NCBI GenBank assembly: GCA_964247055.1
Contig: OZ176055.1
Location: 1,054,001 to 1,118,000, forward strand
Direction: 5' to 3'
Origin: Paragordius varius
Taxonomy: Eukaryota; Animalia; Nematomorpha
DNA: 64,000 nt
Of this stretch, positions 11,301 through 14,500 are shown one piece after another. The notes below the pieces were generated by a model. That model had not been told where the DNA came from. It saw only the letters and a list, made by a program, of their open reading frames with translations, and did no database searches. Each line of letters starts with the position of its first letter. Within the stretch, counting starts at the first letter, position 1. The translations under genes were made by a program, and so were the position numbers.

Positions 11301-14300
11301 TTAAAGAGATGATTTAACAAAAAAGTAAGGAAATATTTTTTAACTTTAAATATCTCAATTTTTACTGTAAGTTAAGGTAATCTTTTCTAAAAAATATAAT
11401 TATAGAAAAATATTTACTGGGTCATTGGGAGCTGTATCGATTTGGACTTCAACAATTTCGCCTTCTATAACATCAGTTTCTTCCCTAGAAAATATAGGTA
11501 AGTAAGAGTTTTTGGAAATAAAGGTTTTAAAAATGCGTTTTAACGTTATTGAATATAATAATTAAAAATTAATTCGCTAAGTATACTCGTCAGGTCCGGA
11601 TTAAATTAAGTAAATTTAAGTTTTTTTTCCAATTTCTATCTAAGGTATTAACCGTTAAAAGTTAACTATATTTCCTTATTGAATACATTTTACGCTGGTC
11701 TTTTAAAAACCTTCAAATTCCTAATTCAAGTTGGTCCTGAGCATTTCAAGTTAATCCTTTATAGATTTTTAAGCTTCATAGAGGAAAATTGCCCTCCTTT
11801 TGGGAACCATTAATTTAGAGTTTTTAACAAAGTTATATTAAGGACCAGCTTTAAATGTTCAACGATCAACTTGAAATGTTCAACGACCAACTTGAAGTGT
11901 TCAAGGACAATCTTAAAATGTTCAACGATCAACTCAAAGTTTTCAGGAACACTCTTAAATTGCAAATGGTATAAGAAAAATCCCAAATATTATTATTTTA
12001 ATTATTCATATTGTTTGTGTGCCATAATTCGTTTTATATTACCAAAAAATCGAATATAAATTAAAAAAATTACTTGACACAAACTCCAATACTTTTTCGG
12101 AAACATTGAGTTAGAGCTTCGGTTTTGGATAAATCGAGGGAAAATATTTCGCTTGCAGAAATGTTTGTAAATGGTGTCTCAGCTCCTAAAGCTTTGGAAA
12201 GACCTAATAATAATATTAATCATCAACAACATTATTGATAAAATTATCGTTAATTTATTGAGTTAACGAACTTGTAATTATGTAATAAAACATTAAAAGA
12301 GTTATTTATATTTAGTACTATAATTGCAAATTTAACAAGTATTGTAATATCAAATAATAGTAAGCTAAATTAACCACTTAACGAAATGATAATAAATATT
12401 GAACGTTAATTAGTAATGCCACGCATAAATATAGAAAAGTTTGAAATTATATGGACAAAACGTAAAAATATAAAACTATTTTTTTTCAAAAACAACACCA
12501 TACTTTTTTAAACTCTAATTTATCATATATAAAACATTTTATTCTGATAGTAAAATACAAAATGGGTTGTTTGTTACTAATTTCCATCTCTATTCTATAC
12601 TTTACAGTTTAACACTTGAATACAACACATTCCTTTTAGTCCTTCGATTCAAAGTGGGGTTAAAATTAAATTATTTAAATCATATAGAAGGAATCAAAAC
12701 CATGGCAAAATTTTGCTCTTATAAAACATTAATAAACCAAAATATATAAAAAAATTTATTCAAAAATACTTGGTATTCCTTATTTTAAGCTATAACCGAA
12801 AGCTAAATATTTAGTCAACGTCACATGTTTATGGTAAATTGAAAAATAAAACAAAATAATCCGCTTTTTCTAATTCTATCCATGTTAGATGTAATTTAAA
12901 TAAAAAATTAGCTTTAATTTTGCCTTTAAAATTAATTAAGACGATATTTTGCAAAAATTTTGTAAAATAAAAATGGCGTCGAAGTAGTTTGACATGGAAC
13001 TTTTTTTAAAAACAAAATTTTATATACATATTTTGGCATATTTATATAATTTTTATTAGGATAGAAGCATAAATTTAATTTTTTTATTTTTAGGATCCTA
13101 ACTTAAATTTTGTCTGGGGTATTTTTATACCCAATTTAAATCGAAAAGTTAAACAATCAGTTATAATTAAAATAATCAAAATTTATGTTGTTTTATTAGA
13201 AAAGATATTTGTCTTTATTTAAATTTGTCCGGATAATTTCAATTTTTACTGTATATTTGGTGATATAAACTATAATAGGAATAAAAATAAATCGCTAGTT
13301 ATAGAGCCAGATAGTATTTACAGTGCAATCTTCTAAAAGGAAAATCAAAAAAAATGTATGAAAATTTTTTAGCTTATATTATTCCTTTTTTTAAATATTT
13401 GCTATTTAATTAACCCAAACTAGAATTATATATATATATATAAATATATATATATAATATATATATATATATATATATATATATATAATATAAAAATAGG
13501 TATTTTACTTAAAAATCAAAGCCCTAAAATTTTTAGCAAAAAATAAAATTTACCCATTGCGATGGCAGTTTTTCCAGTTGATGGTTGACCAGCAATTAGG
13601 ACTGCTCTACCAGATAATTTCCCTTCCTAAAAAATGTATAATCAAAATTTTTAATTTAAATAAAATGTATATCGAACACAAACGCTGTTAAAACTTTTAT
13701 AATGATATTTAAAAACGGTGGTTTTTAAAGACAAAACTTTTACTATTGTTTTTTAGAGATAATTATATAAATCCCTTAAAACTTTATAGCAGGGGTGTCC
13801 AACACACAGCCCTCTGAGATATTTTGCACAGCCCTATTAATATAGCTATCATAATTTGTAAAATTCTTACTTCCGAAATCTTGAATTTTAGGAAACATTT
13901 TCTAATATTTTAGGCAACGAACTAGCACAAGGTGAAATGAATATTTATTGTATTTCGTTTGTTTAACGGCCTAACGTTTAAAATTTAATAAATGTCCATA
14001 TATTTTGAAGTTAAATATGAAAAAATCCAAACTCAAATTTTGGTTAAATGGCAAAAACTAATTTGCGTTTTAAAACAAAACTACTTTTATCGTTTCAAGA
14101 ATTAGGCATTTTTAAAAATATATGAAATTGGTTAAAAAAAATTTTAAGTTAATCTATAAGTTTTGGCATTTTATCGTGGAATAAATTTATGATGATTACT
14201 TTAATCATTTCAAGGATTAAACCAGCACCTCTTCTGGCACGAATCTGACCCACCATTCCTTGAGAAACCTAGGTGATTATATATAAAATAAAGTTTTACT

Positions 14301-14500
14301 GGTTCGGCATGCAATTGTTTATCTAGACCAAGACCGGTAATATGAGAATGTGCACCTATGGACATATAAAAATAAATTCAAACCAATTCTTTCTATTTTT
14401 GTAATTTCACGGATCTCTGCAAATTTCCCAATCTATATATATTTATGTCGATTAAAATATATTAATGATAAATTAAATAGATAAAAATTACCGAATCCAT
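2352..14500 (-). CDS. RUVBL2: RuvB-like 2 (reptin) AAA+ ATPase, 471 aa, 15 exons
   Basis: Exons (minus): 14500-14492, 14432-14384, 14355-14300, 14268-14200, 13626-13554, 12203-12074, 11484-11418, 10072-9966, 9416-9323, 8733-8610, 8271-8177, 7441-7323, 3758-3639, 3248-3119, 2525-2352. All introns are GT-AG and phases are consistent (1416 nt). Motifs: ERIGAHSHI, Walker A GQPSTGKT, Walker [37 protein letters not shown]. Confidence 0.97.
3919..4181. mobile_element. MITE family A (TA-flanked CCATTT...AAATGG termini, 21-bp subterminal repeats)
   Basis: Inverted ends plus an internal AATTATGTGTTTTC / ACACATAATT palindrome; at least 8 related copies in the window. Confidence 0.6.
4381..4905. mobile_element. 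Degenerate hAT-type MITE
   Basis: Right end GTGGCCCACGAAGCC...GTTAAAGACCACTG matches the hAT MITE ends seen elsewhere in the window; the left end is decayed. Confidence 0.4.
4972..7262 (-). mobile_element. Degenerate RTE-like non-LTR retrotransposon with inverted 5' part
   Basis: Minus-strand RT fragments ([49 protein letters not shown]) with an (AAC)n-like tail at ~4972-4982. The plus-strand piece at ~6505-7262 encodes the pre-RT region (KNNKSSGP). Many stops and frameshifts. Confidence 0.8.
7564..7727. mobile_element. MITE family C (CAGTA..CATTTTAATGGTTG TIR)
   Basis: ~35-bp inverted repeats; a second copy lies at 19126-19298. Confidence 0.55.
8919..9145. mobile_element. MITE family B (TA|CAGTAAAAATTGAAATTATA long TIR, Tc1/mariner-type ends)
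   Basis: Long inverted arms; further copies at 10146, 12431, 22011 and 58678. Confidence 0.6.
10146..10410. mobile_element. MITE family B copy
   Basis: CAGTAAAAATT...AATTTCAATTTTACTA with an internal CCATACTTTT / AAAAGTATGG pair. Confidence 0.6.
10637..10909. mobile_element. hAT-type MITE
   Basis: TIRs CAGAGGTCTCCAAC / GTTGAACACCCCTG and a subterminal GCGGCCCG; no clean 8-bp TSD. Confidence 0.6.
10942..11207. mobile_element. MITE family A copy
   Basis: TATA|C.ATTTACAATTC...GTAAATGG|TATA with three 21-bp subterminal units. Confidence 0.65.
11840..11969 (+). repeat. ~5 x 21-bp tandem repeat (AACTTGAAATGTTCAACGACC) forming the right end of a family-A-related MITE
   Basis: The units are directly visible and end in GCAAATGG|TA; the same end occurs at 61640-61703. 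Confidence 0.7.
12431..13251. mobile_element. MITE family B copy interrupted by a piggyBac-like MITE
   Basis: Left arm at ~12431-12545; right arm ends TTTTTACTG|TA at 13251. Confidence 0.5.
12613..13148. mobile_element. piggyBac-like MITE (~540 bp, TTAA-flanked)
   Basis: TTAA|CACTTGAATAC...TCGAAAAG|TTAA with a subterminal TTCGATTCAAA(G/T)TGGGGT / ACCCCAATT..AATCGAA pair; three copies in the window. Confidence 0.65.
13427..13487. repeat. (TA)n microsatellite
   Basis: Imperfect TA run. Confidence 0.9.

What the first reader, a model, noticed from the sequence alone, without database searches (positions are those of the whole stretch)
14269..14383. 28-nt and 31-nt introns in RUVBL2
Seen: the conserved ERIG|AHSHI junction needs removal of GTTTGAATTTATTTTTATATGTCCATAG (14383-14356, 28 nt), and EP|VSQG needs removal of 31 nt (14299-14269). 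Retaining either shifts the frame of an essential gene. Known: typical animal minimal introns are roughly 40-70 nt, with shorter ones reported mainly in highly reduced genomes such as dicyemids. The same gene also has introns of 0.5-3.6 kb.
Basis: partly seen in the sequence, partly recalled or inferred. Interest (0 to 1): 0.75.

Follow-up and report, generated by a model that had tools for sequence, protein, structure and literature searches.

The report
Two tiny introns in RUVBL2
The essential RUVBL2 gene of this AT-rich animal genome is interrupted near its start by two almost certainly genuine introns of only 28 and 31 bases. They belong to a genome-wide class of 22-32-base introns at gene starts, a size so far published for only two other animal groups, but no RNA could be examined.

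Summary
RUVBL2 lies on the minus strand (14500-2355) with 15 coding exons. The 28-nt segment (14383-14356) and the 31-nt segment (14299-14269) both start with GT and end with AG. Removing them makes the flanking peptides exactly collinear with solved RUVBL2 chains (residues 9-23, 24-41, 42-64). Retaining either one shifts the frame into a stop.

Both sit at intron positions and phases shared with other eukaryotes. One metazoan-like metagenome contig has 59- and 56-nt introns at the same two sites. The other RUVBL2 introns measure 59 nt and 338-3564 nt.

I checked 11 further GT-AG introns of 22-32 nt in seven other genes of this genome. All 12 placed against a start codon lie within about 400 nt of it. 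U1 and U2 snRNAs are canonical.

The best reading is ordinary spliceosomal introns shrunk to micro size. No RNA evidence was obtainable. The taxon (earlier notes say a horsehair-worm relative) is not verified here.

The scan has already reported this intron class many times on other DNA of this genome. Published parallels are myxobolids and Dicyema (under 30 nt) and flatworm microintrons (about 37 nt, clustered at gene 5' ends).

The parts
14492..14500 (-). RUVBL2 coding exon 1 (ATG plus two codons), inferred
   Evidence: This is the only in-frame ATG followed by a GT donor upstream of exon 2. It gives an N-terminus of the length seen in reference RUVBL2 ORFs. Inferred, not tested further.
14433..14491 (-). 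Intron 1, 59 nt, GT-AG, phase 0 (inferred)
   Evidence: Read from the sequence. Exon 2 opens directly after its AG.
14384..14432 (-). Exon 2 (49 nt), encodes ...[14 protein letters not shown]+G
   Evidence: Translation. phmmer match to RUVBL2 chains at residues 9-23.
14356..14383 (-). Intron 2: the 28-nt micro-intron, GT...TAG, phase 1 inside a Gly codon
   Evidence: The same position and phase carry introns of about 49-59 nt in metagenome contigs L083, L087, L058 and L066.
14300..14355 (-). Exon 3 (56 nt), encodes (G)[18 protein letters not shown]
   Evidence: phmmer match to RUVBL2 chains at residues 22-38/41.
14269..14299 (-). Intron 3: the 31-nt micro-intron, GT...TAG, phase 0
   Evidence: The same position and phase carry a 56-nt intron in contig L083.
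14200..14268 (-). Exon 4 (69 nt), [23 protein letters not shown]
   Evidence: Translation. phmmer match to RUVBL2 chains at residues 43-64, E about 7e-5.
13627..14199 (-). Intron 4, 573 nt, GT-AG, phase 0: the first 'ordinary' intron
   Evidence: L083 has an intron at the same position.
2355..13626 (-). Exons 5-15 and introns 5-14 of RUVBL2. Intron lengths in order: 1350, 589, 1345, 549, 589, 338, 735, 3564, 390 and 593 nt, all GT-AG. Stop codon at 2357-2355.
   Evidence: Pfam TIP49 pieces found in the six-frame search. Collinear tblastn of nine full-length RUVBL2 reference ORFs. Junctions read. Intron 12 holds a decayed RVT_1 reverse-transcriptase ORF.

Best explanation
Both segments are ordinary U2-type GT-AG spliceosomal introns that descend from ancestral RUVBL2 introns and have shrunk to 28 and 31 nt.

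They are removed from the pre-mRNA, most likely by recognition of the two splice sites across the intron (intron definition). Removal joins exons of 49, 56 and 69 nt into the conserved N-terminus of an essential AAA+ ATPase.

They belong to a genome-wide class of 22-32-nt, very AT-rich introns. These have weak donor sites (GT followed by A or T) and a TAG acceptor. They cluster in the first few hundred nucleotides of coding regions, beside a second short class (about 58-69 nt) and kilobase introns rich in transposable elements.

Shown here: the boundaries, collinearity, stop codons on retention, shared intron positions, class membership, and canonical U1 and U2 snRNAs.
Inferred: the splicing itself, the mode of recognition, and the shrinkage history.
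For: - GT and AG sit at the only boundaries that restore the frame.
- The flanking peptides map to RUVBL2 chain residues 9-23, 24-41 and 42-64 without gap or overlap.
- All 15 exons are collinear with nine full-length RUVBL2 ORFs and about 70% identical to metazoan RUVBL2.
- There is a single RUVBL2 locus in the 110.6-Mb assembly, so this is the working copy.
- Retaining either segment runs into a stop.
- Contig L083 has introns at the same positions and phases as introns 2, 3, 4 and 5 (59, 56 and about 50 nt). L087, L058 and L066 share the intron 2 site.
- Eleven further GT-AG introns of 22-32 nt were verified in other genes: RUVBL1 (32), IGBP1 (24, 23, 24), PHKA (28, 30), BiP (23, 28), EF1A (24, 22) and a mitochondrial EF-G-like gene (26).
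- T stands at position -3 in 11 of the 13, and every length divisible by 3 carries an in-frame stop.
- The U2 gene has the GUAGUA branch-binding box and the U1 gene has the ACUUACCUG 5' end.
Against: - No transcript was seen. Three protein word searches found no protein of this species.
- Exact look-ups of its open reading frames were negative.
- No clear branch-site or polypyrimidine signal is visible in 13 sequences. The only pattern is a weak A enrichment 7-12 nt before the AG.
- Splicing efficiency is unknown.
- At 31 nt, intron 3 lies just above the 30-nt line used in the literature.
Confidence: 0.88

Rival explanations
1. They are real introns but poorly or conditionally spliced. A large share of transcripts would keep them and be destroyed by nonsense-mediated decay, so the micro-introns would act as a dosage or regulatory brake near the 5' end rather than as neutral constitutive introns.
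For: Retention always gives a premature stop. Donor sites are weak. Extremely short microsporidian introns are reported to splice with a median efficiency of about 25% (PMC13644364, introduction).
Against: The same class sits in highly expressed housekeeping genes (EF1A, BiP), where wasteful splicing would be costly. Nothing in the DNA points to regulation.
Confidence: 0.12
2. They are artefacts or mark a dead gene. Either the assembly carries spurious insertions, or this is a decaying RUVBL2 pseudogene whose N-terminal exons are no longer used.
For: No reads and no RNA could be inspected.
Against: Both segments have GT-AG ends and lie at intron positions shared with other eukaryotes. The other 13 exons are intact and conserved. 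No other RUVBL2 locus exists in the assembly. Eleven similar segments in seven other genes show the same boundaries.
Confidence: 0.03
3. The segments are removed or bypassed by something other than the spliceosome, such as DNA-level excision in somatic cells (like ciliate internally eliminated sequences) or translational bypassing.
For: The size range resembles that of short eliminated sequences in ciliates (my own knowledge, not tested here).
Against: The boundaries are GT...AG, not TA...TA repeats. The positions are ancestral intron positions. Canonical U1 and U2 snRNAs are present. No hop signals were looked for or seen.
Confidence: 0.01

Closest known systems
Ultra-short introns of myxobolid Myxozoa and of Dicyema japonicum (PMC13644364, Mol Biol Evol 2026)
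   Same: Animal GT-AG introns in the 20-30-nt range. They occupy conserved intron positions between conserved exons. Splice-site motifs are reduced (GTa ... [quoted passage not shown] The U2 machinery is canonical.
   Different: In those lineages tiny introns are the norm (median 22-27 bp) in compact parasite genomes. Here 11 of the 14 RUVBL2 introns are 338-3564 nt. The tiny ones are confined to gene starts, and the genome is 110 Mb with transposon-filled introns. The two RUVBL2 introns (28 and 31 nt) sit at the upper edge of that size range.
Flatworm 'microintrons' (Opisthorchis felineus and other trematodes, cestodes, monogeneans, Macrostomum; PMC6530080)
   Same: The intron length distribution has several modes (37 nt, 90 nt and about 3 kb in O. 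felineus). Microintrons lie next to each other in clusters and preferentially at the 5' end of genes, alongside long introns in the same genes. This genome shows 22-32, about 58-69 and over 300 nt, with the same clustering and 5' bias.
   Different: The flatworm mode is about 37 nt; here it is about 24-28 nt. Flatworm microintrons are reported to have splice sites closer to consensus, whereas here the donors look weaker than in the long introns (small sample). This genome shows no IFT57 or tektin, so it is probably not a flatworm.
Tiny introns of ciliates (Paramecium about 25 nt, Stentor 15-16 nt) and of nucleomorphs
   Same: Spliceosomal introns of 15-30 nt with minimal signals. Retention leads to premature stops.
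   Different: These are unicellular lineages in which essentially all introns are tiny. There is no coexisting class of kilobase introns.
Human 'ultra-short' introns (under 66 nt; PMC4463651) and SPF45-dependent short-intron splicing (PMC8363638)
   Same: Short introns with truncated polypyrimidine tracts, handled by a variant of the standard early spliceosome.
   Different: They are about twice as long (the model intron is 56 nt). Whether an SPF45-type route operates here was not tested.

Membership tests
U2-type GT-AG spliceosomal intron | GT at the 5' end and AG at the 3' end | tested here: met
   Both segments, and all 13 micro-introns compiled.
U2-type GT-AG spliceosomal intron | Removal restores the reading frame and collinearity with orthologues; retention breaks it | tested here: met
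   PDB phmmer gives residues 9-23, 24-41 and 42-64. tblastn of full-length references is collinear. Retention gives stops.
U2-type GT-AG spliceosomal intron | Position and phase shared with introns of orthologous genes | tested here: met
   Intron 2 site: L083, L087, L058 and L066. Intron 3 site: L083.
U2-type GT-AG spliceosomal intron | Branch site and polypyrimidine tract | tested here: inconclusive
   Only a weak A enrichment at -7 to -12 and a T at -3 in 11 of 13. No pyrimidine tract is distinguishable from the AT-rich background.
U2-type GT-AG spliceosomal intron | Absence from mature mRNA | not testable with these tools
Animal ultra-short intron regime of the myxobolid/Dicyema type | Intron length of 30 nt or less | tested here: inconclusive
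   Intron 2 is 28 nt (met). Intron 3 is 31 nt (just above). Other genes in this genome have 22-28 nt.
Animal ultra-short intron regime of the myxobolid/Dicyema type | Tiny introns are the majority of introns (median 22-27 bp) | tested here: not met
   In RUVBL2, 11 of 14 introns are 338 nt or longer. HSP90 has no micro-intron, and neither does the one HSC70 gene (on C6) I read in full.
Flatworm-type microintron architecture | Several discrete length classes, with long introns in the same genes | tested here: met
   22-32 nt (13 cases); 58-69 nt (RUVBL2 intron 1, BiP, EF1A); 338-3564 nt. The sample is small.
Flatworm-type microintron architecture | Microintrons lie next to each other and at the 5' end of genes | tested here: met
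   The 12 micro-introns whose start codon I located (all but the one in the mitochondrial EF-G-like gene) lie within about 400 nt of it. They come in runs of 2-3 in RUVBL2, IGBP1, PHKA, BiP and EF1A.
Flatworm-type microintron architecture | Length mode near 37 nt; the organism is a flatworm | tested here: not met
   Lengths here are 22-32 nt. Taxon not established; IFT57 and tektin were not detected.
RUVBL2 (TIP49 family, reptin) | TIP49 domain over the full length; closer to RUVBL2 than to RUVBL1 | tested here: met
   Pfam PF06068 pieces cover profile positions 42-346. PDB hits to RuvB-like 2 rank well above RuvB-like 1. The RUVBL1 paralogue is a separate locus on contig C4.

The most novel reading that the evidence does not exclude
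This non-compact, transposon-rich animal genome (probably an ecdysozoan, said by earlier notes to be a horsehair-worm relative) may run a distinct start-proximal micro-intron regime. Ancestral introns lying within the first ~400 nt of the coding region would have been driven down to 22-32 nt, while downstream introns of the same genes grew to kilobases. That would imply a position-dependent mode of intron recognition, for example one that is cap- or promoter-proximal and needs no polypyrimidine tract. It would have arisen independently of flatworms, myxozoans and dicyemids, and would be missed by standard gene finders.
Probability: 0.3. Interest if true: 0.7.

Novelty: new member of a known kind. 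Interest (0 to 1): 0.5.

Why it matters
If RNA confirms the splicing, this lineage becomes a further animal group with introns at or below about 30 nt. Unlike myxobolids and dicyemids, it keeps kilobase introns in the same genes. That makes it a natural system for asking what sets the minimum intron length and why micro-introns gather at gene starts.

There is also a practical consequence. Gene finders and read aligners with a default minimum intron length of 40-60 nt will mis-predict the 5' ends of many genes here, including essential ones such as RUVBL2, EF1A and BiP. That may inflate apparent gene loss or lower BUSCO scores.

The RUVBL2 case adds one specific point. Both tiny introns sit at positions that carry 50-60-nt introns in other eukaryotes, so they arose by shrinkage rather than by insertion.

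Tried and rejected
1. **RNA evidence.**
- I built a profile of a full-length reference RUVBL2 ORF (L009) plus my exons as separate rows by reference (A2) and ran the word search. The mollusc-like scaffold dominated the ranking and no own-species protein appeared in the 120 rows shown.
- An exon-sized query (exon 6 open frame) found only 8 unrelated fragments.
- The same scaffold approach for BiP (A6, 94% covered by my own exon rows) also returned no own-species protein.
- Exact look-ups of eight open reading frames of this genome were all negative.
- MAFFT misplaced the short exons whenever more than about five rows were given (A1, A3, A4), so a fully covered RUVBL2 profile could not be made.
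All searches went exon by exon, by reference.

2. **Relatives' loci.** Intron sizes at these sites in published hairworm or Priapulus genomes could therefore not be read.

3. **Reference-free scan.** I scanned the window for short GT...AG segments that join open frames. Decoy dinucleotide pairs gave as many hits as GT-AG (93 against 93-195) and known cases were missed, so I abandoned it.

4. **Automatic junction refinement.** Refinement from tblastn HSPs failed because HSPs run through short introns. Junctions were read by eye instead.

5. **Taxon.**
- Nematode cuticle collagen, IFT57 and tektin were not detected. This fits a cilium-less non-nematode such as a hairworm but proves nothing.
- Published hairworm genomes are 200-300 Mb (10.1101/2024.06.11.598342), against 110.6 Mb here.
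- Gordionus has 26.9% GC (10.1101/2023.06.26.546503), similar to this window.

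Full report
**The locus**

The window is about 25% GC. It is part of contig C6 of a 110.6-Mb, 44-contig assembly.

A six-frame Pfam TIP49 search of the whole assembly finds exactly two gene loci. One is in this window and one is on contig C4, which is RUVBL1.

Nine full-length RUVBL2 ORFs were taken by reference from metatranscriptome contigs. Their tblastn hits on the window are collinear over the whole protein.

Reading the junctions gives a minus-strand gene from 14500 to 2355 with 15 coding exons. Its 14 introns all begin with GT and end with AG. Their lengths in order are 59, 28, 31, 573, 1350, 589, 1345, 549, 589, 338, 735, 3564, 390 and 593 nt.

The protein is about 70% identical to metazoan RUVBL2. 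Intron 12 holds a decayed reverse-transcriptase ORF. Exon 1 (ATG plus two codons) and the 59-nt first intron are inferred from the sequence only.

**The observation**

phmmer against all PDB sequences maps the three flanking pieces to RuvB-like 2 chains as follows:
- exon 2 to residues 9-23;
- exon 3 to residues 22/24-38, running to 41;
- exon 4 to residues 43-64, with its first residue at 42.

The three pieces abut without loss or overlap once the segments are removed.

Left in, the 28-nt segment leads to a stop after 20 codons. The 31-nt segment shifts the frame into a stop. The GT and AG lie at the only boundaries that restore the frame.

**Are they introns?**

Among 80 metagenome loci that encode RUVBL2, several are genomic and carry introns.

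Contig L083 (JAAGOD010016070.1) has a metazoan-like N-terminus. It carries introns at the same codon and phase as my introns 2, 3, 4 and 5. Their lengths are 59, 56 and about 50 nt.

L087 and two fungus-like contigs (L058, L066) also split the Gly codon of ERIG|AHSH in phase 1.

So both micro-introns occupy pre-existing intron positions and are best read as shrunken ancestral introns. Artefact and pseudogene readings are very unlikely, because the gene is single-copy and otherwise intact.

**A genome-wide class**

I verified further cases myself.

| Gene | Micro-intron lengths (nt) | Other introns read (nt) |
|---|---|---|
| RUVBL1 | 32, at ARE\|ACG | |
| IGBP1/TAP42 (neighbour, window 14665-14933) | 24, 23, 24 | |
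| PHKA-like (window 57099-57396) | 28, 30 | |
| BiP | 23, 28 | 69 |
| EF1A | 24, 22 | 58 (GC-AG), 61, 64 |
| mitochondrial EF-G-like gene | 26 | |

The IGBP1 start codon lies 29 nt from that of RUVBL2, head to head.

HSP90 and the HSC70 gene on C6 have only introns of about 65-350 nt.

The 13 micro-introns share these features:
- GC content of 8-23%;
- GT followed by A or T at the 5' end;
- T at position -3 in 11 of 13;
- an in-frame stop in every case whose length is a multiple of three.

The 12 whose start codon I located lie within about 400 nt of it. The mitochondrial EF-G-like gene was not placed.

In my small sample no intron falls between 32 and 58 nt. That suggests discrete classes of 22-32, about 58-69 and over 300 nt.

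The long RUVBL2 introns more often start GTAA (8 of 12) than the micro-introns do (3 of 13). This is a trend only.

The best U2 gene (177.7 bits) has the GUAGUA branch-binding box. The best U1 gene (124 bits) has the canonical ACUUACCUG 5' end. Nothing therefore points to an unusual spliceosome.

**What could not be done**

No RNA of this species was reachable.
- Three word searches gave no own-species protein.
- Exact look-ups of its open reading frames were negative.
This also prevented reading the orthologous loci in hairworm or priapulid genomes.

Searches went exon by exon, by reference, and the joined step is left out.

**Taxon**

Earlier notes of this scan call the genome a horsehair-worm relative. 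I could not verify that.

Points that fit:
- a GC content like that of Gordionus, 26.9%;
- no detectable IFT57 or tektin;
- no nematode cuticle collagen.

A point that does not fit: published hairworm genomes are 200-300 Mb.

The gene architecture and the presence of rhodopsin-type receptors argue against a myxobolid or a dicyemid.

**Comparison with what is known**

Introns under 30 bp in animals are published only for Myxobolidae and Dicyema japonicum (PMC13644364). In those lineages they are the majority of introns.

The architecture seen here has these elements:
- several discrete length classes;
- micro-introns next to each other;
- a 5' bias;
- long introns in the same genes.

It matches flatworm 'microintrons', which peak at 37 and 90 nt plus about 3 kb in Opisthorchis felineus (PMC6530080). 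Here the short class is about 10 nt shorter. The hairworm genome papers I could read do not mention introns.

**Verdict**

I file it as a new member of a known kind.

The RUVBL2 pair is a clean example, backed by comparative evidence, of a phenomenon this scan has already reported repeatedly elsewhere in this genome. At 28 and 31 nt it sits at the upper edge of the class.

What this report adds to those notes is the shared-position evidence and the link to flatworm microintrons.

Noticed in passing
window 14530-15177 (+): IGBP1/TAP42 gene lies head to head with RUVBL2. The two start codons are 29 nt apart (14500 against 14530). Its first three introns are 24, 23 and 24 nt (14665-14688, 14802-14824, 14910-14933). 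The two transcription start regions must overlap or be extremely short.
   Followed up: partly
window 57030-57531 (+): Phosphorylase-kinase alpha/beta-like gene (Glyco_hydro_15) with 28-nt (57099-57126) and 30-nt (57367-57396) introns near its start.
   Followed up: partly
window 5697-5966 (-), inside RUVBL2 intron 12: Decayed reverse-transcriptase (RVT_1) ORF. The 3.6-kb intron is largely a retroelement remnant.
   Followed up: partly
L098 (G000:C1:9912000-9916500, minus strand): The third intron of EF1A (58 nt) appears to start with GC rather than GT (a GC-AG intron). Its first two introns are 24 and 22 nt.
   Followed up: partly
L100 (QNUV01000054.1, whole contig): A 2.2-kb contig filed under Microbacterium arborescens carries an intron-less, insect-like BiP ORF. 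The top named BiP hits of the profile built on it were lepidopteran, at 95-97% identity to it. This is eukaryotic contamination of a bacterial assembly.
   Followed up: no
L018 106-1547; L056 1732-2212: Other metagenome RUVBL2 loci show gaps of 31-34 nt (L018), or frame changes over about 20 nt (L056), between collinear pieces. These are unidentified organisms with tiny introns of their own, possibly ciliates.
   Followed up: no
window 39926-44284 (-) and 49186-49911 (-): A 1452-codon open exon and a 241-codon ORF both match rhodopsin-family receptors (7tm_1, C-terminal and N-terminal halves). This is probably one receptor gene with a very long third loop or tail.
   Followed up: no
G000, whole assembly: IFT57, tektin and nematode cuticle-collagen N-domains were not detected in six-frame searches. 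More than 40 U2-like copies cluster on C3 and near contig ends.
   Followed up: no
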